From positions 1-61,814 of the forward strand of contig JAAILG010001785.1 in the NCBI GenBank assembly GCA_012026655.1: a DNA stretch of 61,814 nucleotides. The letters are read 5' to 3'. Position numbers and translations under genes: made by a program. The notes under the pieces are model-generated. The model was not told where the DNA came from. It saw only the letters and a list, made by a program, of their open reading frames with translations, and ran no database searches. Shown here piece after piece: positions 3,541-61,814 of the stretch. How positions within the stretch are numbered: position 1 is the first letter of the stretch; each line of letters starts with the position of its first letter. The DNA is from Hydrolagus affinis. Taxonomy: Eukaryota.

Positions 3541-3738
3541 AGTCATTAAAAAGAAAATTCTTCTATTTACTCAAGGAAATGCATCTGACTGTTCAGTACA
3601 CCGCAGGCTTTGGGAAAGGAAGAAAGCGGCCAAAATGTTTTTTGATGTTGCTGTTTTTGTATGTAATTATCTTGTGAAGTGGAACAATAACAGGTTGTGT
3701 TCTTCTCTTCCCTTCTTTCCTCTGTTTTCCATCCGCAG

Positions 3739-3885
3739 TTTATGATTAAGAATCCCAACAAACGCTTAGGATGCGTCATAGCGCACGGTGGGGAACAAGC
3801 CATTCAGATCCACCCGTTCTTTGACAGTATTGACTGGGACTTACTTGAACAGAGGAAAATCAAGCCGCCTTTCCAACCCAGGATT
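3739..3885 (+). CDS. PRKCH: Novel PKC (eta by synteny, epsilon-like sequence), penultimate coding exon
   Basis: CAG|...|GTAAG boundaries, 147 nt; [49 protein letters not shown] is the kinase domain end and AGC tail start. Family certain, paralog assignment from adjacency to HIF1A. Confidence 0.85.
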
Positions 3886-3928
3886 GTAAGTTTTGTCTTT
3901 TTTTCTACGTGTCAAAAAGATATATATA

Positions 3929-4149
3929 CAGGAAAAGACCGTTTATCCGGCACCCGATCAACCGCAACTTCCGTTTAACCGGCATCGCCCCCAAAAAAAG
4001 TCCGCATTCGATTAACCGGAATTTATCCGGAAAAACGCCTTGAAATTTTTTTAAAAACATTTTTTTTGCCTTTTCGGATGAATATCCGGCACACGCTTTA
4101 ACCGGCATTGGCCAGGTCCCGAGGGTGCCGGATAAATGGGCTTTTACTG
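3929..4149. mobile_element. Tc1/mariner (pogo/Tigger-like) MITE
   Basis: ~26-bp TIRs CAGGAAAAGACCGTTTATCCGGCACC / GGTGCCGGATAAATGGGCTTTTACTG in TA-rich flanks; further copies at 39291, 40876 and 41108. Confidence 0.85.
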
Positions 4150-4899
4150 TGTATATATATAAATATTTTAAAAATTGAAACAGCGGAATCCTTCACAACT
4201 ACCTTAAAGCAATCTCAGAATTCCGAGCAACAATCAAGTATTGTTCTCTTTCGATCCACCTCTGATTTGTAGACCTCTTACTGCTTCACTCAGAGTGTTT
4301 GCTTTTTTTTCCCCAAGGATAATTTATTAGTTTATTTTGGTGGTTTGAAATCTTATGGCGGATTTTATCTGAATGAGTCGCTGGGATATATTGTGCACTA
4401 AAACCAGCAAATGGAATTTCCCCTTGTAAAGATGTGATGGAAAGATTATTATTGATGGAGAAGAGGCTTACGTTACTAACACTGAGCCTCGGCTCATGGC
4501 TGTCGGGACCTGTTCATAATAAATTTAAGAAACAGTAAATAATAAATGGGTCACTCAATCCGCGACTGTTTGCAGAACACTGCAGTGCGCAATTGGCTGG
4601 CGTGTTTGGCCTACAAAATATACAGTCAATTCACTTTACTCTGAAGGGCTTTGAGGCATCTCAAAGACATGATAAGGCGATATATCAAATGCAAGGATTA
4701 TAGGATTCTTCTTCTGTATGTGTTCAATAAAGCCCGACTTGTTCTGTAATAGGTGTGGGAGGTTAGAAGGATTAACAGAAAGATAATAATATGGGAGGCA
4801 TATGGTTTCATGAGTAAGATAAGTTAGTTTGTTTATTCACACCAAGGTTGGGAGTGAAGAGGTAAAAGTACTTTGAACTTAGGGTTAGTGTTAGGGTGA

Positions 4900-5245
4900 A
4901 TAATAATAATAATAATCATAATACTGTAATAATAATAATAATCGTTGCATTTGATATAGCGCTTTTCAGATCTTCTCGACGTCTCAAAGCGCTTCACAGA
5001 ATATACTGTAAAGTGAATTGACTGTATATTGTGGGCGAAACATGGCAGCCAATTGCGCACAGCAGTGTCCCACAAACAGTCATGGATTGAAATGACCAAT
5101 TTTATTATAGTTTTTTTCGAGGGATTATTCTTAGGCGTGTGGAGTAAGGAAATGTGGCCAAGGTTGCACCCTGACCTTCCTGAAATCAAACACAGGTCTC
5201 TCACTTGCAAGGCGAGTGCTCGAACCACTGAACCACAGACCTCCT
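4900..5245 (-). mobile_element. Full-length tRNA-derived Deu-core SINE
   Basis: tRNA-like head with A/B boxes, GGGACACTGCTGTGCGCAATTGGCTGCC core, L2-like tail and (ATT)n on the minus strand. Confidence 0.88.
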
Positions 5246-5445
5246 CGCTAAGGTTAAATTCCCGTGGAAATGCACATAGTGTAGGTTTCATAGCGAAGCC
5301 TGCTTATCTTCCACTGCCTGACACAGATTGTGAACTCTGTTTGCATGGTTTACAATAAGTTGCTGTGGAAACTAATGTGATAGCAGGCTGACTTCTGACC
5401 AGGAAGGAAGTATTGTCCATCCCATTTCTTATTTGCTGTGGAAAG

Positions 5446-12829: not shown

Positions 12830-13135
12830 TAATAATTATCCTTGCATTTGATACAGCATTTTTCACATCTTTTAGATGTCTCAAAGCGTTTCACAGAATA
12901 TATTGTAAGGTTAATTGACTATATTTGTGGGCAAAACACGGCAGCCAATTACACACAGCAGCGTCCCACAATGAGTCTGGATTGAAATGACCAATTTATT
13001 ATTGTTCTTTTTTTTGAAAGTTTATTATTAGGCGTGTGGAGTAAGGAAACTTGCCCAAACTTCGCCCTGCCTGGAACCGAACCCGGATCTCTCGCTTGCA
13101 AGGCGAGTGCTCTAACCACTGAGCTACACGATTCC
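12830..13135 (-). mobile_element. Full-length SINE
   Basis: Same family; head ...CTCGCTTGCAAGGCGAGTGCTCTAACCACTGAGCTAC. Confidence 0.88.
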
Positions 13136-14721
13136 ACTTGATGAGTGCTCTCAGCATATAACAGGAACAAGGTGCTCAACTCCTGAAGCAAACAAAAAAA
13201 ATGCATACATTACGGTACTATATAATGGAGAGTTTGCTTATAAATCTTGCACATTTGACTTGAGTATACTGTACAGTAATTGAAAAATAAACCAAAGCGT
13301 ACGTAGTTGATTTTAGTTAGTGAGCTTCCTTTACCCAGAAAGTGTACTCTATATACATTGTTAATGCTTAATCTATATAACAGAATGGAAAGCTCAAAGG
13401 ACAAAAGAGTGCTTGAGTTCCACTGTACGCACATACATACGCACACGCCTATGAATTAGTGGTTTTGCTCAAACTTCAATGACCTCCTATTTTCCCTGCC
13501 CAAGTATTAAAAGTGGTTGTTAAATTATAGAGATATAGGAAGTCTCAGTTATGCATCAAGATTTTCAGCAGCAATGAAAAACAAAATAATTAATCTTTTC
13601 ATTTGATGTATTGCAAAATTCATGTCACAAAGCTCTTTACAGGATTTACTGTCACGAGTAGTGACTACGCATTTTGTCGTGTCAGCCAATTTGTGCACGG
13701 CAATGCTCCGCAAACCAATGGATCAACAATTTTATTTGAAAGAAATCAATCTGTGCCATTGCTTTTATCAGTGTGCGTTCGCTGAGTGTTCTGTTCAGCT
13801 CCAGTATTAGTTGTCTCTTCCACCCTCACCCCCGCCATCGTCTCCCTATCATCCAGATCTCTGTTCACATTACCAGCCTGGCCTTGACAGAGTAGCTTGA
13901 AAAAGCTTCAGAATCTGCCACTTGTCACATGTGATATAATTTTCATTCTAAAACTGCTCTTTGATTATGTACCCGTGATTACAACTGTGACAAATGTGTA
14001 AGTTTTAGAAGGAATATTGATGCTTTAGGGTTACGTAAGTCATTTATTTACCACAGTCTATGGACCAAATCCTTGGCGTCCAATTCACACATCATGTCAT
14101 CAGCATTACTCCATTGTAACTGAGCCCTGAGGTCAAAGTCTCTGACGTGACAGTCAATAACATATCTGGAATTGCTCCAGTAAAGTAAATGATATTTACT
14201 ACTGTGTGTGGGCTCGCCAGCAATGGCAAAGCACCACAACAAAAATCTACTGATTATTGACCCTCGTCCTGCGATGTCTATGTTCCTCTGATTTTTGTGC
14301 CAATTCACAAAACGTTCACGAGTTTACAAAGTCACAGTAAAGGTTCAGGTCAAGAAGGCCCTTTTGTTGGCTCATTTGAACTTGTTTGTCCAGAATCCCC
14401 CTCCTCCCATGGCAGTGTCAAGCTGTTTTATTTTGCTGAGTCCCATGTCCCACCTTCAACCACCCGTCCTGACAACCTGTTCCAGTTGTTAATTATCCTC
14501 TGGGTAAAGAGATAGATGCTTGTTGGTGTATTGCCCTGAAATTGGCCTCTGCTGTCCTAAACCCATGTCCGCTTGTGATGTCTCGGTGAACCCGAAAGTA
14601 TTGTTCTGGATTTATCTTTTCGATCCCACACATTAAGGGATATCACCTTAGAGATGTCTTGTTTCAAAACTTGAAAAGACTGAAGAGGAATAATCTATGA
14701 GCTTGACTAATCATTATTCAT

Positions 14722-15050
14722 GGAGTCCTGTAGCTCAGTGGTGAGAGCACTTGCCTTACAAGCGTGAGACCTGTGTTCGAATCCAGGCAGCTCAGGGTGA
14801 AACCTTGGGCAAGTTTCCTTACTCCACACATCTAATAATATTCCCTCAAAAAAAAACGCAATAATAAAATTAGTCATTTCAATCCACGACTGTTTGTGGG
14901 GACACTGCTGTCCACAATTGGCTGCCGCGTTTCGCCCACAAATATATAGTCAATTCACTTGATAGTACTGTATATTCTGTGAAGTGCTTTGAGACGTCTA
15001 GGAGACGTGAAAAGCATTAAATCAAATGCAAGGCTTATTATTATTATTAT
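14722..15050 (+). mobile_element. Full-length SINE
   Basis: GGAGTCCTGTAGCTCAGTGG (A-box)...GTTCGAATCC (B-box), Deu-like core, (ATT)n tail. Confidence 0.9.
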
Positions 15051-27835: not shown

Positions 27836-29720
27836 GCCCTAGGAGGAGAGATAGAGATGCCAATGGCAAGATAACTACCTGGTTGACCTTGGGCCTCTTT
27901 CTCTCTCTTTCCCCTTCAACACAAAAGGCCTCGCAATTCGCGGCTGTGACTTGTACAGTTTGTGCGGTTTGGGTTTGGTTGGCTTCCTGTTCCTTGGCAG
28001 AGCTGGCATAGGATGAAATGCTGTTGTTGGTGCCCGGGTTTCTATCTCTTTCCTTTCTTTATTCTCTCTTTCCTTTCTTCTCTCTCTCTCCCCCCCCCAC
28101 CCACCCCTCTCTGTCTCTCTCTCCTCCTCTCTTTTCATCCTTTATTTTTGTTTTCCCTGGTTTCAAATGGGGATTAAGTTTCGTTTATTTTTATCTAGAA
28201 AAAAACGCACCAACAAAACATCTGTCCTTCAAACCGAGTTTGGATTTCATTGGATTGTCTACTTAGAACCAGAGTAGTTAGATGAGTGGCATCTTAACAT
28301 CAGGGTGGGTTGGTGCTGTGGGCACATGCTTGTGTGTTGAATAATAAGCACAGTGAAATCCTACCAGTTCTGTGATTATTCATGCCTGCCTAGTTGCATC
28401 TCGGCTTTTCTTTTATTAAAAAAAAGGAAATGTTGTATTGATCACCTTGCTGTTGGTATGGTTGGATGCCCTGCGGAATTGCAATTCATCACAATAATGA
28501 GTTTGGGCATTGAGCTCATATTCCAGACTGACACTCCCAATACAGTCAGGACATTGCCTTCTCTGTCTGATAAAATATTTCGCTTGCCGATCCTTTAGGT
28601 GGAAGTTTTGTTTCAAAATCGGATACTAGTACTTTGCATAATTTACAAAGTACTTAGAAGCATTTAAATGCGACAAATCAGACATGGAAGCGCTATATCA
28701 AATGCAAGAATTATTATTAATAAATAGGCATAAAAATTCAAGTTCTTTCTGGACAATTACTGTTGCTACTGTTTTTGAAAAGAACAGGCGGTTTCCCTTT
28801 GTGTCCTAAACATCAATACTTCAGATTAATTGGTCATGCACTTCATGTCAACTGATAGGACCTTTCTGGTGCAAGTAGCTGCTGTTTGCAAACAATAACC
28901 GTCATAACGCTTGACATTAATTACCTTTTGATCTGAGACGCTACGGTGTGTGGAGAGGGCTGCATAAGTGCAAGCTGTTGACAACCATATCCTTGCAAAG
29001 TTTGTTTCTCCTTTACTGTGGATTGCTCCGAAAATTCTTTTTCTGCTTTTATGATTGGTTACATCTATTGGTTGTATTACTGTGTTTATCTAACTTTGAT
29101 TGTCAGTAATCACGGTGAGGCAGATGAGCGAAGGGAAAAGTGGCATGATTGTTCAACAATTTCTATAGAAAGTGCGTTTGATGATAAGCGTTTGTGAAGA
29201 TTATATAGATAGCCTGGCGATTTGGAAGGTTGCCAAAAACGCACAGTATTGCATTTGTAAGTGAACGGTTTTTTTCAAACTGTTGGACCTACTCCTAAAT
29301 GTGCTATCAATTTATTTATATTAGGAATTGGGCAACAATGACATTGTTGCTTTTGGAAGCCATTGGTTGTTTTTCAACTGCATATGACACCACAGTACTT
29401 CAGTTTAATGTCAAACAGCTTGTCATCAAGCTGTTTGATACTACCCACAAATATACAGTATATTCACTTTACAGTATATTCTTTGAAGCTTTTGACCTGC
29501 GTAAATTGGTTAATTCCAAACATCTCCATGCAGGTTTTGCTGTCGTGTGTCTGTACAGATGTTGAGACATTGGGAATGCCAAAACATTGTAGTCACCAGT
29601 GGCAACTTCATCTGGTTGCTGAGGAAACTGCAATGGCATTGGTATTCAAGAATATTACATCTCCAGGATTTATGTAATACAACGTGTATCGTTGAGACTT
29701 CGTATTTTATTTAATGCAAT

Positions 29721-29793
29721 GTAAACAAATTTTCTGTGGCTTTGGCTGCTTACGTGATGACCGTGTTTTGCTTTGTGTTTACCGTCCACGTAA
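29721..29793. promoter_or_regulatory. Candidate intron-1 enhancer (paired HRE cores and forkhead sites)
   Basis: GTAAACA 29721, TACGTG 29751, TGTTTAC 29776, CACGTA 29787. Confidence 0.35.
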
Positions 29794-30009
29794 TCATGCT
29801 CATTATTTATCCGATTTCCTTTGGGGCAATAAATTTCTGATGAATTGTTGGAAAAATAAGTCACTGTTGTATAAATATTTTCAAATCATGACCAATGAGT
29901 GTTTTAAGTTAGACTCTTGGAGCAATTTTGTCTGTTCTGTACTTCCTCTCAATTTCATTGGGATTCCAGGATTAGAGCACTCCAATGTACACTGTAGTCT
30001 AATCTGCAT

Positions 30010-37810: not shown

Positions 37811-39290
37811 GTAATAATAAACCTATTCGCTTAATGCTTCCACACACACAAATAATTTTTTCAACATTCTAAATATTGAATTCAATACTTTGGACAAAAA
37901 AAAACTACTTAGAATTTTCTTTTCCCTTAGAATCCCTAGAATGACAATTGCTTCAAAGAATCTCACTTTTAAACTTAAGAAGTTGTACCATAGTCCAATA
38001 ACAAAAAATGTTACCTTGATATCCCTGAATTGACTGTCTCACTCACTGGAGCTTAAGAGATACCCAATGTCGGAAATTAAAAACACCCACTGGTGTGCGA
38101 CATACAACATACTCTTCCTGGGTTGTGCTGAGGAAGGCAGACTGAACTCTGCTACTAATTATCCTATACTTGACCTGGGAGAGCTTGATACTGACATCGG
38201 ATACTTGAATATTAAGTGTTCCATTTCATAGCACAGATATCCCTACCTTGATGAGCATATTCGCCGAGTTATTAAACATTTATGCTTGCCCTGTTTTCCC
38301 CATTTTCCCTCTCAAAGTATAGTACTAGTGGATGGGTGTTACTGCACACTCACCAGTACTGTGCTTTCCCAGAGTCGGATCAGCTTTCAGGCCCATCCAA
38401 AGCACCTGTCCTGTTGAAGTAAACGGAGCCGCCCTCATGTTGCATGTGGCTCCTCCCCGTCGGTCACGTCAGTGGGGTGGCCTACCTGTGGAGGAGGCAG
38501 ATGCCAAGGATTTCTCATCGAAGGTAAACTGTTTTTCTCAGCATATTATTTTCAAATCTACCTGGAAGGAATATTTTAAGAACTTTATTTATCTTTCGAA
38601 ATAAGTTTAATGTTTAACAATCTGGTTTCCCAGTGTCCAATGTGGAAGTGGGATATAGATTGTCCAAAATTGGCTATCAAAACAATTTATTTTCCAATCA
38701 GGGTTTAGAACTTTAAATGTTGGTCACTTTACCTTATGTATGCCACTTTGTATGGATGCAATCGTATGTTTATTGTGATTTGGACTATAATAATCCTTGC
38801 ATTCGATATAGACTTCTCAAAACGCTTCATAGAATCTACTGTAAAGTGAATTGATTATATATTTATGGGTGAAATGCGCAGGCAATTGCACACAGCAGTG
38901 TCCCACAAACAGTCACTCTTGAACTTGTTTGTTTTTACCGAGGGATTAAATAGCCACAATGTTTTGTTGTGTATTTTGAGAATCATTACTTCGACTTTGT
39001 TCAATATTTTAATCTGACTGTACAAGAAATCAGAAAGTACTGATTTCAAGAAATGGTTGGCAATATCTGATGATTACAAATTATGGTTTTTTTTAAAGTT
39101 AGTATGCATCTAACAACTTGAAATAAAAAGTTTTTTTTATATCAGGTGGTATGGAGCATAGGATTAGAAGTGATTATATAAGTTGTGGGGAATGTAGACT
39201 TTACAAATAATGCCAATGTGCCACAGCAACCTGCAGTCTACTAAACCATATTAGTGTCATTTCACATGTATTTGGATTCAAAGTATAATA

Positions 39291-39495
39291 TAGTAATAGC
39301 CTGTTTATCCGGCACCTTCGGGACCTGGCCAATGCAGGTTAAAGCGCGTGCCAGATATTCGGTCGAAAACACACTCACAAAAAAAAGCATTTTTCCGGAT
39401 GAATTCCGGTTGATCAAATGCGGACTTTTTTTTTTGATGTGCCAGTTATACAGAAGTTACGGTTGATTGGGTCACGGATAAACTGTTTTTTACTG
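39291..39495. mobile_element. Tc1/mariner MITE, opposite orientation to the 3929 copy
   Basis: TA-flanked; TIRs TAGTAATAGCCTGTTTATCCGGCACC / CGGATAAACTGTTTTTTACTG. Confidence 0.85.
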
Positions 39496-40258
39496 TATAA
39501 TGTATATGATTCAGCACAATTAATTAAGCTGTTGGTCGAAGATTGGGTTTGGTCAGAATGTGATTTGTCAAGTACATTTTTTTTAAAATATATGAAAATA
39601 GGTTTGTTAATGTGCGGTGTATTTTTAAAATTCAAATACAGTTTTGCAGGAGCACAAGTATATCTGGAGTGATTCCGATAGAGTTGACATCTATGGAAAA
39701 ATGGGTTACTAGCCTTTTTTTAAAAAAAAGTTGCAGATTAATTATAGGGGCTGTCTAATTTGCATCTTGGTAAATGTTTGACAGTATAGTGAATAAAAAG
39801 CTGTTATCTGCTTGCAGCTGTAAAAGCATCCCATTCTTGGTGTAAATTGAATTCTCTGAGCTGAAGATTCTTCATCTGCAAGAAGGAAACATTCTTTCAT
39901 GATCTAATGAAACTGCTTTGGCTCTTAGCCAGCAACTTACTGGCAACTGGAGTCAAGGGTTATCTTTCTTAATTGAATATTAAAATTTCACTGTGTTAGT
40001 CATGGGAGTTTGCGTAATTTCTATTCCTTCAACGACACTATACACTATCAAGTATATGCACATTTCCTGCTGTTTGACTGTATGTAATTAAGTAACAATT
40101 CTGTTTTCAGTGTGCTGTAAATAGCTAGATAATGTGCTGTATTCTCCCCAACAAAAGAAATCTAGGATGTTAAGCTGCTTGTCGCACTGTGATATGTCAA
40201 GTAACTTGTCTGAAGGTGTTTCTGATGAGCATTCCATTTTTAATCTTCCCAATGTTAG

Positions 40259-40443
40259 CTCAGAGCGGAGAAAGGAGAAGTCTCGTGATGCTGCCAGGTG
40301 CCGAAGAAGCAAAGAATCTGAGGTATTCTATGAATTGGCCCACCAGCTGCCATTGCCTCACAGTGTCAGCTCTCACCTGGACAAGGCCTCGATAATGAGA
40401 CTGACCATCAGCTATCTGCGAATGAGAAAATTACTTAGCCCCG
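40259..40443 (+). CDS. HIF1A: HIF-1alpha exon 2 (bHLH)
   Basis: [59 protein letters not shown]; acceptor TTAG|C, donor G|GTGAGT; 185 nt. Confidence 0.93.
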
Positions 40444-40875
40444 GTGAGTAAAACAAAGATTGAGAAAATTGATCATGTATGCACTGAATTCCTTTGTATT
40501 CTTCAGTGTTACAATATAAATACTGTTCAAAAAGAAAAGGCTGAAACTGTTTATTGGGGTTCGGTTGGTTTTGGCAATTGAAATCTAATTCTTTTGGATC
40601 CCTTCAAGTTTTATAGTTGCTAACCCATCTAGTTTTGAACAGTGATATAGAACCTTGATGGACATGATGGATGTGTATTCCTGTAATTAAAATTTAAAAG
40701 CTTGTTAACACTTCAGGCTTTATCTTAAATCCAATACAACTTAAGGTTTACATCTTGTTGGACAATTCTTTTTGTGGGAAGCATATTTGAAAACTATTAA
40801 GTATCAGGTGGTGGGAGAATAAATCCCGTTCCTAATAGGGAGTTAACAGAATACCCTGGTGTGTAGAAATAAGTA

Positions 40876-41064
40876 CAGTAAAAGCCTGTTTATCCGGGAT
40901 CCCCAGGACCTTGCCGATGCCGGTTAAAGCGTGTGCTGGATATTCGACCGAAAACGGGAAAAAAAATAATTTTTCCAGATAAATTCCAGTTAATCGAATG
41001 CGTACTTTTTTTTGTACTGCCGGTTATACGGAAGTTACGGTTGATCGGGTCATGGATTTTACTG
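40876..41064. mobile_element. Tc1/mariner MITE with partly deleted right TIR; a further partial copy starts at 41108
   Basis: TA|CAGTAAAAGCCTGTTTATCCGG...TTTTACTG|TA. Confidence 0.85.
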
Positions 41065-41400
41065 TATATTTCTCCATAGATGGCAGAAATTATCAATTTT
41101 CAATGTACACTAAAAGCCTGTTTATCCGGCACCCTCGGGACCTGGCCAATGTCGGTTAAGCGACATGTCGGACATTCAGTCGAATATCCGACTCCGAAAA
41201 CCCAACATATAAAAAAGAACTTATTTTAACACATACCATATTAATAATACTGAATAATAACAAACAATAACGCAACACCTAACTTGCCATTGTCTCATTA
41301 CATGTTTAATTGCACCAGTTTACAGAAATTGAATTCAATACAAGTAAGCAAAGATTCCTTGATGAATTCATATGACCCAATTTGTTTGCATCTATTACAG

Positions 41401-45984: not shown

Positions 45985-46694
45985 TAATCTATACATTAAT
46001 CAATAAATATTATAATTTACAAAGTGCTGCAGAAAAGTTCATCTCCACTGGGTCCTCCAAAAGCCCGTGCTCTTGAGACTAACCCTATTCACAATAACAA
46101 AGGTACTTAAGCAAAATGGTTATTACTCCCTTTACCCAAGTCCGCCAAAAAGGTTAAACCACTTTATATTTGCTCACTGTTTATTTTTTTCCCCCTTTAA
46201 TCCATCTTTATTTTATCTAATCCACCACATCAACTGTAGCCCTTATACCATCTATTTCTAACTTTAAAGTCTGCTGCTGTCCTGCCGATGTCTTATCTCC
46301 TACAATCAATTTTGGAAAGTGAGAGCAATTTTTTTTCCATGACGTTAGTGGCTCCTAATTTACTCAACCCATCAGTAAAAATTGATTGCCAAGCCTCGCA
46401 ATCTTTGTAGCACATTGACAGTTACTCAGATCTAGCTGTACCTGAATAAGTAGATTAGTTCTCTTACATCTATTTTGTATGATATTGTTTCATTGAAACC
46501 TCTACATTATAATAATTTCCCATTGTATTATACCATTTTAACGACACAAACTAAATATTGTACAAATTTCCGCTAACCTCATGATTTGCAGCAATGCTGC
46601 TATCAAAAACTTGAGATCTATCCATTTACAAAGTCCTCCTATGTTGCAGAATGGCATTTAAACACTTGCTTTCGTTTTCTTTTGCTTCAATCAG

Positions 46695-46842
46695 TGTTTT
46701 CTAAGGGCCAGGCTACCACAGGCCAATACAGGATACTGGCCAAGGAAGGTGGTTATGTTTGGGTCGAGACTCAGGCTACAGTGATCTACAACACAAAGAA
46801 TTCCCAGCCTCAGTGCATTGTCTGTGTGAACTACGTTTTGAG
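46695..46842 (+). CDS. HIF1A: HIF-1alpha exon 8 (PAC)
   Basis: [48 protein letters not shown]; 148 nt. Confidence 0.95.
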
Positions 46843-47101
46843 GTAATGGTTTTGGAAGCTTGGTCTATACTGTTGTGAGGATTGTGTGTGAATATGAAGG
46901 TTATTCTAGACTAGCACCATGATTTTGCCAGGTGACCAAAGTCATTTTTAATTTGACCTTTTAATTCTTGGAAGCCAAAGGCAAAGCTACCTAGGTTCCG
47001 ATTGCTGATTCAATAGAGTCTTCTGTTCTGCAAAACGGTTCATTGTCTTCGCTTTTATTGTGTGGAGTCTTTCAATTAACCAATGTTCGTTATTTTCCCA
47101 G

Positions 47102-49510: not shown

Positions 49511-49947
49511 GATGTTGATGACTTGGATTTGGAGATGTTGGCTCCATACATCCCAATGGATGATGATTTTCAGCTTCGATCATTGGACCAACTTTCATCC
49601 CTCACAGATGTACAAGCCAGCCCTCCTCGTTCGCAGGCTATGAGCAGTATGATAAACGTCTTCCAGTCAGCCCCAACATCTGCTAAAAACTCCACTGAGA
49701 AATATATGCCAGCGTTAAAAATTTCTTTGGAAAACACTGAGTCTCTCTCTGTACCCCGGTCTTTCCCTTCTCCCCTGCATATGATGAATGAAGTCAGTTG
49801 TACTCCAGAATCACCATACAACAAAACCAGCAGAACCACTTCACCTGTCCGAACAGGTGGGAAAGGATTGCTGGCTGATCAGTCGGATACTTCGTGTCCA
49901 GGAAGTCCAATGTCTCCAGTGAAGCCAGTGTTGACTTATACCAAAAG
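49511..49947 (+). CDS. HIF1A: HIF-1alpha exon 12 (CODD / N-TAD)
   Basis: DLDLEMLAPYIPMDDDFQLRS; LEMLAP at 49529-49546; 437 nt. Confidence 0.94.
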
Positions 49948-50378
49948 GTAAATCAATCTTGAATCCCATGGTAAATGGCTTTCACAGTCCTTCCTTTCCA
50001 TTGCTAAGCAGCAGAAATATAATACAATTAATCTTAACTACTAATAACTTGTCCTGAGCTGAATTTTTGTTTTAAAAAAAATTTCAACTCATGTTCTTGA
50101 AACAAACAAATGGCAGTAGGTGATGAGCATCATTTTGTAACAGCGTTAGCCCTAGCGAAATCATATAAAATTATGTCCTTTTTGAGTCCATCAAGTTTGA
50201 AGATTATAGTGAGTAAGTCGACCAGTAATATGACCTAGGTGGTCAAGCTGGACAAAATAATCTATTTGAGTTTTGCACTCAAGTTAACAGTGACCTTTAA
50301 ACATTAGGTTTGATAACAACTCACGATTCCACACAATTGATGTCTGACTTTGTATTTGTCTTGTGATTTTTATTGCAG

Positions 50379-52390: not shown

Positions 52391-52542
52391 ACTTTTTTTA
52401 AAGTCTAAAAATATATGTTTTTTTAAGGTGGTTTGATTTAAATATGCTACGTTTCTGAAAATACGAAGTGGTGAAACAAAATTAGGTGACAGTAGAGTGC
52501 CAAACATTTGTTTTAGTTTTAACACTTATTTTCATTCAACAG

Positions 52543-52694
52543 ACACAGTGAGCCGACTCCTTATGCACTCGACAGAGACTAGAAAATTACCGACACTTAC
52601 CAGTTACGACTGTGAGGTGAATGCACCTATCCAGAACAACAGAAACTTGCTTCAGGGAGAAGACGTGCTCAGAGCATTGGATCAGGTTAACTGA
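52543..52694 (+). CDS. HIF1A: HIF-1alpha exon 15 (C-TAD with FIH-target Asn)
   Basis: SRLL...[32 protein letters not shown]; 152 nt. Confidence 0.96.
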
Positions 52695-54093: not shown

Positions 54094-54214
54094 TTTCACT
54101 CATTCGAGATTGTCTCCTTTGAATTTATTTCTTAAAAGAAATTTTTTGATTGTTAAGACTGGCTTTCGATTGCATTTTCAATATGATCTCCTGAATACCA
54201 TTTGGGGAAAAAAT

Positions 54215-54600
54215 GTTCTATGCTTCCTTGACCTCTCTGCTGCCTTTGACACAGTCAGCCACACAATCCTCCTATACCACCTCTCCTCCCAGCTCAATCT
54301 TCATGGACCTGCCCTTGCCTGGTTTGTATCTTACCTCTCTCTCCGTTTCCACTTTGTCGCCAACAATGGCTTCTCTTCCAGCTCCTGCACTGTCATCTGT
54401 AGCATCTTCCAGAGCTCTGTCCCTGGCCCCTGCTTTTCCATATCTGCATGCTCCCCTGGGGGTCAACTTCCACAGTTTTGTGGATGACACCCAACTCTTA
54501 TCTATCTGCCTCTGCCCTCGATTCCAGGACCACTGCTGTCCTGACAAGACATCAAGTCCTGGATGAGAGCTAACTTTTTACAGTTGAATGTTTAACAAAA
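54215..54600 (+). mobile_element. L2-clade LINE reverse-transcriptase fragment
   Basis: LDLSAAFDTVSHTILL...ALAWFVSYLS...FVDDTQL with frameshifts. Confidence 0.85.
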
Positions 54601-55464
54601 TGGAACCAATGCTTACACAGACCACTACTTTTCCTGGTAGAACTTAATTAGATGGACACTTCACAGCGATTAAAACAAATAATAAACTTCAATGATCAAC
54701 TATCTGAATGACTGTATTTACTGGAATCAAATTATTAAAATGTTCTTTTGGCTATTTCCGCATCAGTAATTCTAGGCCATTTCCCATTAGGGTTAACAAA
54801 ATTCTTGACCCGTCCGTAATGATCAGTGTAATTTTACCTTGGCAATCTTATCTTTTAATAAAAAATTATGACAATTCTTACTTATAAGCTTCATGTTTTA
54901 TAGAGATACAAAGTAAAGAAGCTTGATAGAGAATAGAGGAAACTATAGCTAAAGAGTCCTTTGGAGGAAAATCAAAGATGCTTAACACCATGTGGAAGGT
55001 GTGCCTGATAACTAAAATAACTAAGAAAGATTAAGGCCACACTTCTGGAAATAGGGTTTTAAAAAAAACCTAGAGGCCATAAGTGATCAACATTTTAAAA
55101 AAATTGGGTTAAGAATTGTAAGACTTAAGCTTTATTGGATAGAGCCTACAGCTTAATGAAATGCAAGAGAAAATGTATGAAACAAGGTTGATAATCCTCA
55201 GAGCTCTCCAATTTAAGCACTTGAATATCAAACGTCCTATTAATCAAAAAGGATGTAATCCTGAAGATAATAGAGTAGGAAGCATGTATGATTATCTAGC
55301 AAATAATTGTATTTCAGAGCAGTTTTGAATCAGATTCCCAATACTGAAGCTCAAATATTCTGATTTTACCATTAATATCACTTTCTATTGAACATTTTTC
55401 CAAACAAGGGTTTCCATCTGTAAACTTGACTTAATGATAATAATAGTTAAGTAAAGTTTAAACA

Positions 55465-55731
55465 ATAATAATCCTTCCATTTCTTCTAGACGCCTCAAAG
55501 CGCTTCACGGAATATAATGTAATGTGAATTGACTATATTTGTGGGCAAAACGCAGCCAGCAGCCAGTCGTGGATTGAAGTGATCAAATTATTTTATTATT
55601 CGTTCCTTGAGGGATTATTATCAGGCATAAGGAGTAAGGAAACTTGCGCAAGGTTTCCCCCTGCTAGGAATGGAATCTAGGTCTCTCGTTTGCAAGGCAA
55701 ATACTCTGAACCACTGAGTTACAGGACTCCA
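55465..55731 (-). mobile_element. SINE, internally deleted
   Basis: Family tail and head on the minus strand. Confidence 0.82.
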
Positions 55732-56920
55732 TAATTTACTCTCCTCTTTAAGGCACTCCCTCTTGCCCTGATAGTTGGGAGCGACTTCCCTGAGATTCTA
55801 CCCACGTGCCGGACACTATATAAATGCAAGTTGTTGTAGTTATTTTGCCTACATAAGGCATCCTTTCTTAAGTGAAAGCAAGCGATTGATGGTTAAAGCT
55901 AATGGAACACTTGGGAGGAATTAGGCTAGATTTTCTGGACAGAGGAAAGAAACTTCATTGCAAACGAGATATAGGTCCTGATGACTCCTGAATTAAAACT
56001 ATGATAAGGTATCCTGAATCCTTTATGTTTCCAGGAATTAGTCAATGTCCTTTTTCAAACGGGTGCAATGGTTAATTCTGACCACACGGTGACAGTGCAG
56101 ACACTAAAGTCTGCAGACAACAAACTAAAGTACAGTCCATGAACCTGGATAGCTTGCAAAACTCGTTTTTATCAACTCCCAGTTTCATCAATTTAAATTT
56201 CATCAACTCCCAGTTCATCATTTTGAAAGCCTGTGTGTGCCAGATGAAAGAGGCAACGTCTCAATATGCAAGGTAAGGAAGGTTATAAACTATTCCTTCC
56301 CCAAATAGGGGAGTGTGTGTTACAAGTGTGTGTAGGTGTGTGAGAGTGTAGGTGTGTGTGTGTGTTAGCCAAGACACCTAGAAAAAAAAACCTCTCTCAA
56401 GATACAAACTGGTGAAATAAAGCAATGAAAACCGATGCAAATGTTTCATCCTTACACAGTACTTGCTTCCTTTTATTTATAATAATAATCCTTGCACATA
56501 TTCCCCTTAACCACGTTTATTTCTATTTAACCCAGCCGCCCCTCTCTAAATAAAACGTGTATTTAGGGCTGAAATGCAGGCTTTTTAAAAATATATATAT
56601 GTATTAAAAAATATTATATATATAAACACATCAGTCACTTCCAATTTAAGCCCATTTTTTGTGTTTAAACCCCTTGGCTTTCAAACTGCAATAACATTAA
56701 TCCATTTCAGCAATGAATTCCCCCCTCCACACACACACACACACACACTCCCAATGTCTGCCTATTTTTGGGGGGGACCTTTGTGGACGTGAAAAGAAAG
56801 GAGCAAATGTATTGTTGTTCAGATTAAATGAAAAGACATTGTAGACAGACAGACAGACAGACACATTATGAATGTGCCTGTGAATGAACTTCACTGCTAC
56901 ACTCAGGCAGCCACACCTCG

Positions 56921-57070
56921 CTGTAGCTTTAGCTACGTGACCCCAGGCACTGACCTACTCTCTGCTATTTGAGAGTATGTACATCAGCAGCAAAAAAACT
57001 AATCGAGGACAGGCTATATCGCTTTCCATTTCAATGGTTCTGTAGCTTGCCTACGTGCAGAGAGGCACAC
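56921..57070. promoter_or_regulatory. Tandem bipartite hypoxia-response element (HBS plus CAC ancillary site, two copies)
   Basis: Two units CTGTAGCTT-N2/3-CTACGTG-N5-AGGCAC at 56921-56950 and 57040-57068. Confidence 0.6.
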
Positions 57071-58599
57071 GCCTCGATTTTCTACAGGAGTTTCTTAACT
57101 AAATAGCTACTGAATCAGTGGTGGGGGGGTGGGGGGGGATTAGCCAGATATGTATATGTTTATCTGTCTATCTGTCTCTCTGTTCTGAAAGCTATGAGTT
57201 GGCAACATCAATTCGCAAAGAAAAACTCACACACACACACACACACACAAGCTAAAAACTGGGAGATGATTTGGCATGTTTCTTTACAGCTATTGACTCG
57301 AGAAAGTGCTCTTTTTTCTGATGAAAGATGTAATATCTTAACGGGTTTGTTCTCAAAAACCTGCTGAGGATTTACAGCCTTTCGCTTCCCATTTTATTAT
57401 TTTGTTTGTTATAATCTCACAGTTGTCTCTACAGTAAAACTTGCATTAATCACACCTATTTGGTTAGAAATGTAAAATTTGTTGTCGCTGTCGTCAGGAA
57501 TAGAGGCAGTGGGGATTCTAAATCTGGACTATTTTACAGACGGGTATCTGTGACAGCTTTTGTACTAATGTATTTCCAATCGAAACGGTGGTCTTTAGTG
57601 CAGAAGCAGAATGGAACTGTAGTTAAAATAGACAAGCAGGATGAGGCTAGAAGATGAGGCTTGAAAACACTGCTGTGCGCAATTGGCTGCCGCATTTCGC
57701 CCACAAATAATTCATTGTACAGTCTATTCTGTGAAGCGCTTTGAGACATCTAGAAAACGTGATAAAGTGCTACATCAAACGCAAGCATTAAACTATTATT
57801 AAATACACAGCAGGTCCCTCAATGGGGAAAAAAAAACACCTCTATAACAACAACAATGCGCATTTGTATGACTAATGTATAACACTTTTCCAGGAGAGAG
57901 AATATCTAAAGCCTGTTAGACGTTAGTTGACCTTAATGTGAGCTGCCGGCATTTTCCAGTTTTATATTTAAGACTGCATCTTCTTTCAGGAGTTAGTTGG
58001 AAGTTTAAGGCTGATTCTCTCCACAAAGGCTGAGGCTGCCAATATGTTGATTCCCCTCGCCTGCTGGGGTCCCAACCTGACTGTTCAGTGCTTTGGGAAA
58101 GGCGCTCTATCTGTTGTTGTGGTTGTCCCACCATAGGTCAGAGCACTGAAACTCAATGAACCTAGGAGCTGGGTATCATCTTTCTGAGGGAGGAGCGTAG
58201 ACAGCCACCGAACTTCGTGGCCTCCACCTATTTCTCTGCCTCATTCATAATCCCATCAATCAATGGTTGTGTTTGCACATAGATTGCAAATATCGAGTCT
58301 CGGTTACAATAAATCCTTGCTTTTCATATATAGCACCTTATCACATCTTCCAAGACACCAAGGCAGTTCACAGAATATACTACACAGTGAAATTGACAGT
58401 ACATTTTGCTGGCGAAATTAAATGAAAGGGCTTCTTTTGCTTTCAACAACAGTCAACACAATGTATTAATAGTTATAATGTTGCTCAACGAGATAACCTA
58501 TTCCAAGAACCATCACATTACTGTATATAAATAGTATAACTGGCGCACTTCCTGTGTCCTAAGCCTTCATTCCAATTTGTTCTTGTTGAGTCACCCATC

Positions 58600-58950
58600 A
58601 AACTAAATCTCATCAGGATCAACTGGCTCCCTGACTCTGAAATGGAATCAACTTCAAGCCCCTCACTCTCGCACACGAATCCCTCCATGCCCTCGCTCCC
58701 CCCTCCCACCCCCATCTCAGACCTGCCTGTCCCACTATCCACTGCCCGGCCGCTTCACTCAGCTAACACAGACCTGCTGCCCATGCCATGACCCCTCCGT
58801 GCCACCAATGATAGCGTACCGTAGGCCATTGTACCCCCATATATCTGGAAATTGCCCTTCCAATTGCTCGACCTCGTTCCCTCTATCTAACTTTAAACCC
58901 CCACTGAAAACCCATCTCTTCACCAGCTCCTCTCTGGGCTGGTCAGGTCA
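58600..58950 (+). mobile_element. Degraded L2 3' fragment
   Basis: CAACTGGCTCCC...TTCAAG...TGGAA...TTTAAACCCCCACTGAAAACCCATCTCTTC (FKPPLKTHLF). Confidence 0.6.
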
Positions 58951-59539
58951 ACTCCTCTTCCCCTTTCTGCCTTGCTCAGCGTTCCAACCCCACCATTCTC
59001 CTGCTCTCCAAGACATTACCTTTTACATGACGTTTGCTGTACAAACGCAAGCCGTATCGTTGAGTCCGTTAACCGGTAGAGAACCATTTGCCCGTCAGGA
59101 TTTACTACAAATATTCCAAATAGTTGTGTTTGTTTTCCAACAGCCACCAAGCTTTTTTGGCCTTGCCTCTCCCCTGCCCCTTTCCCCTCATGTGAGCAGT
59201 TCATTTTAGGGTTCAGTCCCATAGGACTGAACCAAATGGCATTTCCATCCATCTGCGAACTTAGATGGCTAAACTTTTTGGCGTTTTCCAATATATTACA
59301 TAATAATGGGGTACCTATTAATGGCTTCATAAGATTGGCCCAAATATCACAGTTTTAAGTTTGAGAATCCTTTTTTTTTGGGGGGGGTGAGGGGAGAGAC
59401 AACAATAATACAAACTGAATTATCCGATGTTAAGTGGACAACAATACCTATATTGTAGTTGCCAACCATTTTGAAAAATGTGAGAATTTGTTTCACTCAG
59501 CTTTTAAAGACAAGTAAAGCAAAGTCATTGATATGATTC

Positions 59540-59540
<1 letters not shown>

Positions 59541-59588
<48 letters not shown>
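59541..59588. repeat. (TATC)12 microsatellite
   Basis: Direct sequence inspection. Confidence 0.95.
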
Positions 59589-61489
59589 ACAACAAGTTAT
59601 ACATTGAATAACATTATGTATTGAATAACAGTGCAAAACAATTCGTATGCATTTCGATTCTCTCTCTGTGTGTGTGTGTGTTTGTGTGTTTGTGGTTGAG
59701 TTGTGGTTTGAACAGCTCATTATGACTTGACTTCCGAGTGAGAAAAAGAGTTGGGTCAGGAGACGTGCAGAGAGTAGCATCACAGCGAGGAACAGGTCAG
59801 AATGGCCTTCTGTCTCAACACTCATTGTCTTTGTCAGCAATTGACTTAACGGTTTAGTTCAAAGAGGGGGGGGGGGGCAAACAATACAATAGATAAAACT
59901 CCTTTGCTATCTATTTGTTTAAATCTCTGTGATTTGTTTGTGTGTGTGTGGAGTGTGGACAGAGAGAGAGACAGAGAGATACAGATTTGTTGATTTGCCA
60001 ACTCTATAGTAATAAATTCATACAATGAGGGAGGGAGAGAAGACAATTTGACATTCATTCTTTTTTCCCCCCACCGCCTGTTTGGATCTATTGACTGAAC
60101 GAGATACATACGAACTTGCAAACACAGTTATGCTTCAAGAATGACTGTCCCTTGAACATTCAGCATTTGAAAGGAGGGGGGGAGGAGGGGGGGAAAGGAA
60201 ACACACACATACATATCAGTTTTTTTCTCTCGAAAGAGTTTGTAGGAACATTGCAAACCAGAAAGTCACTCGGTTTTTTTGTTGAACCCATCCGACATAA
60301 AAGTTCACATAGAAGTTACCAAAAGGCGCAATCAACCAAGACAGTAGAATAACAAGAATAATAAATCTCCACACAGTAACAACAACATAACTTGGCACTT
60401 TCCAAATCGTTTGGAAGTTTGACACTCCTCTTTCATCTGTGTCAGCATTTTAACATTTTAACATTTTAATTAGACCACTTATCAATCCTCATTCTTCCCA
60501 GATTGATATTCTCTCCCTCATCTGAACGCTTGACCTGGGGTTTGCTAAATAGACCCTCCCTTCCCATTAGCTTTGGTCACCAAAAAAACACCCTTCACCA
60601 ATACAACACAGCACCGGTCTCTTTCCAAATGCTCATAAAAAATGTTTTTATTTTTCGCTTTTAACCCCCTGTGGAAACTTGCAGTGATACATTTTTCATA
60701 AATAACGAATTATTATTTGCATTCATTACACAGACTCCAGCCCAAATGCTCTTTCTGTCTATCCTACCTTGTGTGTGCAAATCACTCCTGTGTTAGCACT
60801 CGTAGGGAAAGATCCATCGTCCTCCTATCTCGCTCAACAGTGGAGATGTGATGTGATGTGATCTGAACTGGACAGAGAGAGAGAGAGACAGACAGAGACA
60901 GATCCTTCGCTCTCGCCCTTTCCTATCACAGACAAGACTTGCAGCCGCTGCTCTTTCGTTTTCCCCTTTGATTGCTCAACACCCCATCCATCCATCCATC
61001 CCTCCCCCCACCTCACACACATCTCCCTCACCCACAAACTCCCAAACCAAAGCAATTCTTCCCCTTCCCATCACCAGCACTAAACACTGGCACCAGACTT
61101 CATTCATAACTACATCCCACCAGCAGCACCACCAACAAAAATATACTGTGTGTTTATATATATATATAAGATTACATATATATTTTAAATCTTGGAAAGA
61201 AAAATAAATGCATCAGATGAAGGAAATAAAATACTGTACCTTGATTGCTGCTGAGGGAGGGATGGAGGGATGGAGGGAAGTAAGTCTTGAACGAATGCAG
61301 AGGTTATCTCCCCACCCCCCATTTCTCTCTGTCTGTCTCTCTCCATCTCCCTGCACCTCCCCCTCCACCCCCATCACAATGACACGCAGTTCTATACATG
61401 ATTCACACTCGCCCACAGATCCTCTCCTCTGCACTTTTGCAAATCAACTCATTCCACTCACCCAGCACATGTAACCACTCTTGGCTCTC

Positions 61490-61720
61490 TGACCAATCAG
61501 GCTCCAGAGAGACCAAAATAGTCCCGCCTCCGAGGGGAGGGGGAATTCCGACACTGACCAATCATCACCCGGCTGCCTGCTGTGACTCCGCCCACCTGCC
61601 GCCCGGCCCACCAATCAGAGCAGGGTGGAGGCGGGTCTCAGTCCCGTTTCTCTTCCGGGTTTGAAGTGAGCCCGCCCCCTTTCACTGAGGCACGTGGGTT
61701 GTGAGGTGTACGTGCTGACT
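61490..61720. promoter_or_regulatory. Promoter-like GC/CpG-rich island of an unidentified transcript
   Basis: CCAATCA at 61493, 61558 and 61611; GC boxes; GGGGAATTCC (61540-61549); ETS CTTCCGG; CACGTG (61691); TACGTG (61709). Confidence 0.7.
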
Positions 61721-61814
61721 GGTATCAATACACTGGTGGTTAATCAGTAATAATACTAGTGATGATAGTAATACTAGTAATAATAGTAATACAATCCTTG
61801 CCGTGTGACATGGC

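What the first reader, a model, noticed from the sequence alone, without database searches (positions are those of the whole stretch)
56921..57079. Duplicated EPO-style HRE module 2.9 kb downstream of HIF1A: candidate HIF autoregulatory element or antisense-lncRNA promoter
Seen: two units whose cores lie 118 bp apart share CTGTAGCTT-N2/3-CTACGTG-N5-AGGCAC, while the sequence around them is unrelated. In both, CAC starts exactly 8 nt after TACGTG. The region is not a recognisable TE. Known: the EPO 3' enhancer is TACGTG + 8 nt + CACAG. As recalled, the hypoxia-induced human antisense RNAs HIF1A-AS2/AS3 start at or within a few kb of the HIF1A 3' end. Inference: a HIF-driven feedback element or antisense unit may date from the jawed-vertebrate ancestor, and CTGTAGCTT may bind an unrecognised co-factor.
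Basis: partly seen in the sequence, partly recalled or inferred. Interest (0 to 1): 0.8.

Follow-up and report, generated by a model that had tools for sequence, protein, structure and literature searches.

The report
Paired HIF-type sites downstream of HIF1A
Two near-identical short DNA motifs of the kind bound by the oxygen-sensing factor HIF lie about 4 kb past the end of the HIF1A gene, and they may form a feedback switch like one known in humans, but this could not be tested here.

Summary
The pattern is real and exact. CTGTAGCTT-N2/3-CTACGTG-N5-AGGCAC occurs at 56921-56950 and 57040-57068 on the + strand, with TACGTG cores 118 bp apart and CAC at +8 in both.

The flanks are unrelated. 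No similarity to the window's tRNA-derived SINE or to any other part of the window was found.

Whether it exceeds chance depends on the test:
- By plain alignment score it is unremarkable.
- By a three-block test it is unique in the window, and 0 of 100 shuffles match it.
- A third TACGTG, in HIF1A intron 1 (29751), carries the same upstream block. Only 2 of 542 control hexamers show such a triple.

The module is not a CpG island. It lies 4.2 kb past the stop codon, and the mRNA 3' end was not located.

In humans, a HIF-bound HRE promoter for antisense HIF1A-AS lies about 2.8 kb past the HIF1A end (PMC10630634, passages). If this module works, it is a new member of a known kind.

My best reading is a HIF-type enhancer-like module (0.4). 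A neutral relic is almost as likely (0.35).

The parts
56921..56950 (+). Unit 1: CTGTAGCTT - TAG - CTACGTG - ACCCC - AGGCAC. GTAGCT..AGCTAC forms a near-palindrome.
   Evidence: Exact pattern match; sequence read.
57040..57068 (+). Unit 2: CTGTAGCTT - GC - CTACGTG - CAGAG - AGGCAC.
   Evidence: Exact pattern match; sequence read.
56934..56939 (+). TACGTG core of unit 1 (HIF-binding-site type). CAC lies at 56948-56950, 8 nt after the core.
57052..57057 (+). TACGTG core of unit 2. CAC lies at 57066-57068, 8 nt after the core.
57068..57072 (-). Inverted RCGTG core (GCGTG on the minus strand), 10 nt downstream of the unit 2 core. It resembles a HIF ancillary sequence.
   Evidence: Motif listing.
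56938..56956 (+). Two YGACCY half-sites (TGACCC and TGACCT) in direct orientation with a 7-nt spacer. Found in unit 1 only.
   Evidence: Read. The EPO 3' enhancer has a DR-2 of YGACCY (PMC7379665, passage); here the spacing is 7, not 2.
56512..56791 (.). Three further ACGTG cores, starting at 56512 (-), 56555 (+) and 56787 (+). With the two units this gives 5 cores within 546 bp.
   Evidence: P=0.044 for any such cluster among 51 random cores.
29734..29756 (+). Third composite site, in HIF1A intron 1: CTGTGGCTTTGGCTGCT followed by TACGTG (29751-29756).
   Evidence: It lies in sequence that is unique within the window.
29787..29792 (-). Inverted TACGTG, starting 36 bp after the start of the intron-1 site core.
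52497..52694 (+). Open frame holding the last coding exon of HIF1A (C-terminal transactivation domain), with the stop at 52692-52694. This is the reference point for distances.
   Evidence: ORF list. Pfam HIF-1a_CTAD, E 2.3e-20.

Best explanation
The two units are a small pair of same-type binding sites in the 3' flank of HIF1A, and they most likely act as a distal enhancer-like element.

Proposed mechanism (inferred):
- Under low oxygen, a HIF-alpha/ARNT heterodimer binds each TACGTG.
- The CAC at +8, and the inverted GCGTG in unit 2, serve as the ancillary half-site.
- The fixed-distance flanking blocks CTGTAGCTT and AGGCAC hold accessory factors.
- The element then feeds back on HIF1A output, either as an enhancer or by driving non-coding or antisense transcription, as the HRE-containing HIF1A-AS/HIFAL promoter does in humans.
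- A related site in intron 1 may belong to the same circuit.

What is shown: the motifs, their spacing, their block-wise identity inside unrelated flanks, and the recurrence of the upstream block at a third TACGTG.

What is inferred: binding, hypoxia response, the target gene and evolutionary age.
For: - Exact duplicated pattern.
- Both cores are TACGTG, the strongest HIF-site variant (PMC2376195, passages).
- CAC at +8 in both units, against 0.22 expected matches in the window.
- Identity sits in three exact blocks (9, 7 and 6 nt) separated by fully different spacers, inside flanks with no residual similarity. That is what constraint on binding sites would leave. It is the only such chain in the window, and 0 of 100 shuffles have one.
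- The CpG inside TACGTG survives in both units, in DNA whose CpG o/e is 0.45.
- Of 10 TACGTG sites in the window, three (29751, 56934, 57052) share the upstream block. All three pairwise scores are 9 and the next best is 6. P(at least 2 pairs reach 9) = 0.009 in 3000 simulations.
- In a control on the real sequence, only 2 of 542 hexamer anchors have at least 3 such pairs, and TACGTG is one of them.
- CTGTRGCTT occurs 5 times against 1.19 expected, and 3 of the 5 are followed by TACGTG within 8 nt.
- There is a local cluster of 5 ACGTG cores in 546 bp, P=0.044.
- Human precedent for position and mechanism (PMC10630634 and PMC7910558, passages).
Against: - No direct evidence of any kind. Conservation, copy number in the genome, transcription, chromatin state and binding were all untested.
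- By generic measures the pair is ordinary. It is 1 of 23 pairs with at least 22 of 30 matches, and 243 clusters reach its gapped score.
- The intron site against the units scores 11, with P 0.21-0.33 in an unanchored search.
- With both flanks scored, 102 of 39,934 random pairs (0.26%) reach the observed 15. Over 45 pairs that gives about 0.11.
- The block statistic was chosen after seeing the pattern, and I ran many tests.
- There is no CpG island or promoter-like composition.
- The module sits among microsatellites and transposon copies, as neutral intergenic DNA does.
- Neither unit has the full CACAG.
- From general knowledge (recalled, no call): only a small fraction of RCGTG motifs are bound by HIF in ChIP studies.
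- It is unusual even for working sites to share 22 nt in fixed register.
Confidence: 0.4

Rival explanations
1. Neutral relic with no function. A short stretch of about 30 nt was copied locally, for example as a templated insertion during break repair or a small duplication. It has since drifted, or the resemblance is partly chance. It holds TACGTG and lies next to HIF1A by coincidence.
For: - Generic similarity is at background level: 1 of 23 pairs, and 243 clusters at its score.
- Two of 10 TACGTG sites falling within 118 bp on one strand has P=0.081.
- CpG content is average.
- The setting is microsatellites, SINE copies and a LINE fragment.
- The intron-site resemblance is not significant in an unanchored search.
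Against: - Exact blocks alternate with fully different spacers, which is unlike even decay. 0 of 100 shuffles show such a chain.
- The fast-decaying CpG survives in both copies.
- The same upstream block stands at a third TACGTG, 27 kb away (P about 0.004-0.009).
Confidence: 0.35
2. Fragments of a repeated element, such as an old tRNA-derived SINE head or a low-copy transposon. The shared blocks would then be family sequence, not binding sites.
For: - The consensus head of the window's SINE contains CTGTAGCT, and AGCACTTGCCT resembles AGGCAC-N3-CCT in the units (consensus).
- The unit 2 region aligns with two SINE heads at score 12, P=0.003 each. These were 2 of 18 comparisons.
- Three copies of the upstream block occur within 62 kb.
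Against: - A profile built from 9 full SINE copies gives 47 hits in the window at E up to 10. None falls on the units or on 29700-29800.
- A profile of the head alone gives no hit at all in either region at a threshold of -30 bits. 15 of 500 and 2 of 500 shuffles gave some hit.
- No tRNA was found by ARAGORN or by Rfam at E up to 10.
- blastn finds no similarity of the region within the window.
- 2 of 18 comparisons at P=0.003 is weak after correction.
- No transposon library was available, and the genome-wide count could not be made.
Confidence: 0.1
3. A real regulatory element read by another factor that recognises an ACGTG or ACGT core. Candidates are other bHLH-PAS/ARNT partners such as SIM or NPAS, or an E-box or bZIP-type factor. 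It would not be part of oxygen sensing.
For: - The constraint-like pattern is the same as for the best explanation.
- TACGTG-type cores are not exclusive to HIF. SIM2/ARNT binding to related cores is discussed in PMC2441813 (seen in a search listing only).
- Unit 1 adds two nuclear-receptor-type TGACCY half-sites.
Against: - The position matches the human HIF-bound element (PMC10630634, passages).
- TACGTG with CAC at +8 is the HIF/EPO-type arrangement (spacing recalled).
- No specific evidence points to any other factor.
Confidence: 0.1

Closest known systems
Human HIF1A-AS / HIFAL (HIF1A-AS3) antisense promoter with its HRE
   Same: It lies a few kb past the 3' end of HIF1A and carries a consensus HIF site. 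In humans it is about 2800 nt downstream of the termination site, is bound by HIF1A in hypoxia, and is reported as conserved in vertebrates with phastCons100 0.49 (PMC10630634, passages). Mutating the HRE abolishes induction (PMC7910558, section 9 passages).
   Different: Sequence orthology was not tested. Comparison with human sequence is barred, and no other vertebrate locus could be fetched. Here there are two cores with shared flanks. There is no promoter-like CpG or GC enrichment. No antisense transcript has been shown.
EPO 3' enhancer (HIF-binding site, ancillary CA-rich sequence and DR-2)
   Same: TACGTG core followed by CAC 8 nt later. Unit 1 also has two YGACCY half-sites. PMC7379665 (passage) describes HBS + CA repeats + DR-2 for EPO.
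   Different: The full CACAG is absent (CACTG and CACAC instead). The half-site spacing is 7, not 2, and is found in one unit only. The upstream CTGTAGCTT block has no EPO counterpart that I know of (recalled). The 8-nt spacing rule itself is recalled (Kimura et al. 2001, not seen).
HRE carried by a retroelement (rat VL30 secondary anoxia response element)
   Same: A TACGTG-type HIF site carried on repeated DNA can be strongly hypoxia-inducible (PMC2376195, abstract and passages). This shows how a repeat-borne copy could still work.
   Different: No evidence that the units belong to a repeat family. No LTR or element structure lies around them.

Membership tests
Hypoxia response element (HIF-binding cis element) | Core RCGTG, with T or G preferred at the 5' position | tested here: met
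   TACGTG at 56934 and 57052. Ranking TACGTG>GACGTG>>CACGTG from PMC2376195.
Hypoxia response element (HIF-binding cis element) | Ancillary sequence (CACAG or CAGGT type, an imperfect inverted core) 8-9 nt downstream | tested here: inconclusive
   CAC is at +8 in both units, but they read CACTG and CACAC. Unit 2 has an inverted GCGTG at +10. The definition of the ancillary sequence is recalled.
Hypoxia response element (HIF-binding cis element) | HIF occupancy in hypoxia, and hypoxia-inducible activity that depends on the core | not testable with these tools
Hypoxia response element (HIF-binding cis element) | Unmethylated core CpG and accessible chromatin | tested here: inconclusive
   Both core CpGs are retained, but local CpG o/e of 0.41-0.49 equals the window mean of 0.446. 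No methylation data.
HIF1A antisense lncRNA promoter (HIF1A-AS/HIFAL type) | Lies a few kb beyond the HIF1A 3' end and holds an HRE | tested here: met
   4.2 kb past the stop codon. The distance to the mRNA end is undetermined. HRE motifs are present.
HIF1A antisense lncRNA promoter (HIF1A-AS/HIFAL type) | Minus-strand transcription starting at the element | not testable with these tools
The only RNA runs on offer were X13 and X14.
HIF1A antisense lncRNA promoter (HIF1A-AS/HIFAL type) | Promoter-like composition (CpG or GC enrichment, core promoter boxes) | tested here: not met
   GC 0.44-0.48 and CpG o/e 0.41-0.49, with 7 CpG per 300 bp against a 95th percentile of 11. Compare the CpG island at 26.5-27.2 kb and the CCAAT/GC-box cluster at 61.48-61.72 kb. 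Promoters without CpG islands exist, so this weakens the reading but does not exclude it.
HIF1A antisense lncRNA promoter (HIF1A-AS/HIFAL type) | Sequence orthology to the mammalian promoter | not tested
tRNA-derived SINE of this window | Similarity to the family profile | tested here: not met
   nhmmer with the full profile gave 47 hits, none on the units. The head-only profile gave no hit. The pairwise P=0.003 in 2 of 18 comparisons does not survive correction.
tRNA-derived SINE of this window | tRNA-like head | tested here: not met
   ARAGORN found none there. Rfam found no tRNA at E up to 10 in 56850-57150.

The most novel reading that the evidence does not exclude
A composite motif, CTGTRGCTT followed 2-8 nt later by TACGTG, marks three sites in the HIF1A locus: one in intron 1 and two in the 3' flank. 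It would be the signature of an ancient HIF autoregulatory circuit in which HIF binds together with a still unidentified partner. The 3' pair would be the counterpart, in this lineage, of the human HIF1A-AS promoter HRE. That would date hypoxia-driven feedback on HIF1A to early jawed vertebrates.
Probability: 0.12. Interest if true: 0.65.

Novelty: new member of a known kind. Interest (0 to 1): 0.32.

Why it matters
If the module works, HIF-driven feedback from the 3' flank of HIF1A, shown so far in human cells, would be much older than mammals. It would also give a compact, mutable element for studying how HIF1A output is tuned in a non-mammalian vertebrate.

The recurring upstream block would be a concrete candidate for a HIF partner site. 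It could be tested genome-wide near known HIF targets.

If the module does not work, it is a useful caution. A striking match to a famous enhancer, next to the matching gene, can arise in neutral DNA.

Tried and rejected
**Reads**
- One sequencing-run run listed 14 runs. 12 hold part of the stretch, and none of those holders is RNA. X13 and X14 are single-cell RNA runs from the same study as X2.
I therefore have no evidence on transcription, strand, copy depth or other species.

**Orthologous loci**
- The exon peptide search of the representative library gave 18 proteins at E up to 0.001. These were mostly fragments, plus one 652-aa fish HIF1A-like protein (P0013).
- The search for homologous proteins with P0013 found 2322 proteins at E up to 1e-20 among 8000 candidates. 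120 were listed; every one that carries a name is a ray-finned fish HIF1A, and there was no cartilaginous fish.

**Other negative results**
- A metagenome scan for the full pattern gave 0 hits. This says little, because that collection is mostly microbial.
- I did not use the second allowed metagenome scan. A protein-based scan with the conserved C-terminal exon would mainly risk pulling in human contamination.
- Tandem duplication of a 118-bp period is rejected: the flanks have no residual similarity.
- A SINE or tRNA relic is not supported.
- A structured RNA or miRNA is not supported. Fold z-scores were -1.76 (8 of 200 shuffles fold as well) and -1.98 (6 of 200). Rfam gave nothing near threshold.
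- A CpG-island promoter is rejected.
- Earlier scan notes held nothing on this place or topic.

**Literature**
- Searches for HIF1A + antisense + shark (47 papers hold the terms; the 10 listed were irrelevant by title and abstract start) and for HRE + HIF-1 + elasmobranch (5 papers, none about such an element by title and abstract start) found no report in cartilaginous fish. I did not read the other 37 papers.
The exact human HRE sequence and its species alignment (PMC10630634 figures or supplements) were not seen and could bear on orthology.

Full report
**What is there**

The window carries HIF1A on the + strand.
- Single exon frames match bHLH_HIF1A (40134-40448, E 4.7e-38), PAS_3 (46586-46843), HIF-1 (49523-49948) and HIF-1a_CTAD (52497-52691, E 2.3e-20).
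- The stop codon is at 52692-52694.

- CTGTAGCTT-N2/3-CTACGTG-N5-AGGCAC occurs at 56921-56950 and 57040-57068, both on the + strand, and nowhere else in the window. 0 of 100 shuffles have 2 matches.
- The TACGTG cores start at 56934 and 57052, 118 bp apart.
- CAC follows 8 nt after each core. TACGTG-N8-CAC has 2 matches against 0.22 expected, and 3 of 100 shuffles reach 2.
- The similarity runs slightly further, as AGGCAC-N3-CCT.
- The module is 4.2 kb past the stop codon.
Poly(A) signals lie at 53088 and 53211, and none follows up to 54024.

**Surroundings**

The units sit in sequence that is unique within the window.
- blastn of 55000-61814 against the window finds nothing for 55842-57665.
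- Copies of a tRNA-derived SINE lie at 55465-55741, 57667-57778 and 58328-58417.
- A reverse-transcriptase-like frame lies at 54110-54484 (weak RVT_1, E 0.0037, below the cut-off).
- Microsatellites flank the module: (CA)n near 56728-56750 and 57225-57250, (AGAC)n at 56843-56866, and its complement at 57154-57177.
- CpG o/e over the module is 0.41-0.49, the same as the whole window (0.446). There are 7 CpG per 300 bp, against a mean of 5.2 and a 95th percentile of 11. It is not a CpG island.
- Promoter-like DNA in the same window looks different. There is a CpG island at 26.5-27.2 kb (GC up to 0.64, o/e 1.0-1.3), ahead of the first HIF1A exon frame I identified (40134). There is also a cluster of three CCAAT boxes and GC boxes at 61.48-61.72 kb.

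**Is it more than chance?**

The answer depends on the test, and I give both sides.

Against:
- With one indel allowed, 23 non-low-complexity pairs in the window reach 22 of 30 matches at 35-300 nt distance. The module is one of them, at exactly 22.
- Its gapped local score of 13 is reached by 243 clusters.
- Two of 10 TACGTG sites falling within 118 bp on one strand has P=0.081.
- With both flanks scored, 102 of 39,934 random pairs reach its score of 15. Over 45 pairs that is about 0.11.

For:
- The identity lies in three exact blocks (9, 7 and 6 nt) separated by wholly different spacers. Such a chain occurs once in the real window and in 0 of 100 Markov shuffles. I designed this statistic after seeing the pattern.
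- The flanks have no residual similarity (P 0.92-1.0). A decayed 118-bp tandem duplication is therefore excluded.

**A third site**

I asked whether other TACGTG sites share the flanks, and found one.
- At 29734-29756, in the intron between the CpG island and the bHLH exon, CTGTGGCTTTGGCTGCT precedes TACGTG.
- Among the 45 pairs of the 10 TACGTG sites, the three pairs formed by 29751, 56934 and 57052 all score 9 on the 20-nt upstream flank. The next best pair scores 6.
- P(at least 1 pair reaches 9) = 0.115 and P(at least 2 pairs) = 0.009 in 3000 simulations.
- In a control on the real sequence, after masking repeats and low complexity, 542 hexamers have 8-12 occurrences. Of these, 98 have at least one such pair, 8 have at least two and 2 have at least three. 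TACGTG is one of those two.
- CTGTRGCTT occurs 5 times against 1.19 expected, and 1 of 100 shuffles reaches 5. Three of the five are followed by TACGTG within 8 nt.
- Against this, an unanchored alignment of the intron region with either unit scores 11, with P 0.21 and 0.33.
- The intron site lacks AGGCAC and the CAC at +8.
- The intron site is unique sequence within the window.

**Repeat origin**

- The consensus head of the SINE contains CTGTAGCT, and its AGCACTTGCCT resembles the AGGCAC-N3-CCT of the units.
- The unit 2 region aligns with two SINE heads at P=0.003 each, in 2 of 18 comparisons.
- A profile of 9 full copies, searched without filters, gives 47 hits at E up to 10. None falls on the units or the intron site.
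- A head-only profile gives no hit at all there.
- ARAGORN and Rfam find no tRNA there.
- I therefore keep this only as a minor rival.
- No transposon library and no whole-genome count were available.

**Other readings checked**

The region is not notably structured as RNA.
- Fold z-scores were -1.76 (8 of 200 shuffles fold as well) and -1.98 (6 of 200).
- There is no Rfam family near threshold.

**What it most likely does**

- TACGTG is the most inducible HIF-site variant (PMC2376195, abstract and discussion passages).
- The EPO 3' enhancer is described as a HIF-binding site followed by a CA-rich ancillary sequence and a DR-2 of YGACCY half-sites (PMC7379665, passage). The 8-nt rule and the CACAG or CAGGT form are recalled, not seen.
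- Here CAC is at +8 in both units, but they read CACTG and CACAC.
- Unit 2 adds an inverted GCGTG at +10.
- Unit 1 has TGACCC and TGACCT as a direct repeat with a 7-nt spacer, not 2.
- Five ACGTG cores fall within 546 bp around the module (P=0.044).

In human cells:
- The HIF1A-AS promoter lies about 2800 nt downstream of the HIF1A termination site.
- It contains a consensus HRE bound by HIF1A in hypoxia.
- It is reported as conserved in vertebrates (PMC10630634, passages).
- The HIFAL promoter loses hypoxic induction when its HRE is mutated (PMC7910558, section 9 passages).
- Antisense HIF1A transcripts are reported as conserved in rodents. I saw this only as a reference title in PMC1779516.

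I commit to a HIF-type, enhancer-like pair of sites that feeds back on the locus, at confidence 0.4. Binding, response and target are all inferred. A neutral relic is nearly as likely (0.35).

**What could not be done**

- The protein searches reached only ray-finned fish HIF1A.
- The metagenome scan was blank.
- That the genome is chondrichthyan was not checked.
- No comparison with human sequence was made.

**Verdict**

This is a real and mildly non-random motif pair with a credible but untested reading. If true, it is a new member of a known kind. Interest 0.32.

Noticed in passing
window 61480-61720: Promoter-like cluster at the window's end. There are three CCAAT boxes about 55-64 bp apart and several GC boxes, then CACGTG and TACGTGC 12 nt apart (61691-61714). 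GC is 0.54-0.59. It may be the promoter of the next gene downstream, and it is itself a candidate HIF or E-box target. The window ends before any exon.
   Followed up: partly
window 29734-29792: HIF1A intron 1 holds TACGTG preceded by CTGTGGCTTTGGC, with a second, inverted TACGTG starting 36 bp further on. There are three ACGTG cores within 300 bp.
   Followed up: yes
window, 47 places (for example 4951-5252, 12848-13145, 14714-15025, 55465-55741): An abundant SINE of about 300 bp with a tRNA-Ala-like head. nhmmer with a profile of 9 copies finds 47 hits at E up to 10, of which 33 are at or below 1e-5. Many lie in HIF1A introns, in both orientations.
   Followed up: partly
window 39254-39672, 40860-41230 and 3700-4300: A CpG-rich repeat (CpG o/e 1.1-1.7 at GC of only 0.37-0.45) lies on both sides of the bHLH exon (40134-40448). 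It includes an internal direct repeat with a period of about 232 bp at 40.86-41.2 kb. No Pfam match for its frames.
   Followed up: no
window 56843-56866 and 57154-57177: (AGAC)n to the left and its complement (GTCT/ATCT)n to the right form 24-nt inverted arms, 83% complementary, enclosing the 287 bp that hold both units. (CA)n runs lie outside them on both sides. This may be a chance arrangement of microsatellites or the ends of a small inserted element. No target-site duplication was seen.
   Followed up: no
window 54110-54566: A reverse-transcriptase-like open frame on the + strand (weak RVT_1, E 0.0037, below Pfam's cut-off). It is probably a LINE fragment just past the HIF1A 3' UTR.
   Followed up: partly
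window 56167-56227: A local 31-bp tandem duplication (TTTYATCAACTCCCAGTT, 94% identical copies) 0.7 kb upstream of the module.
   Followed up: no
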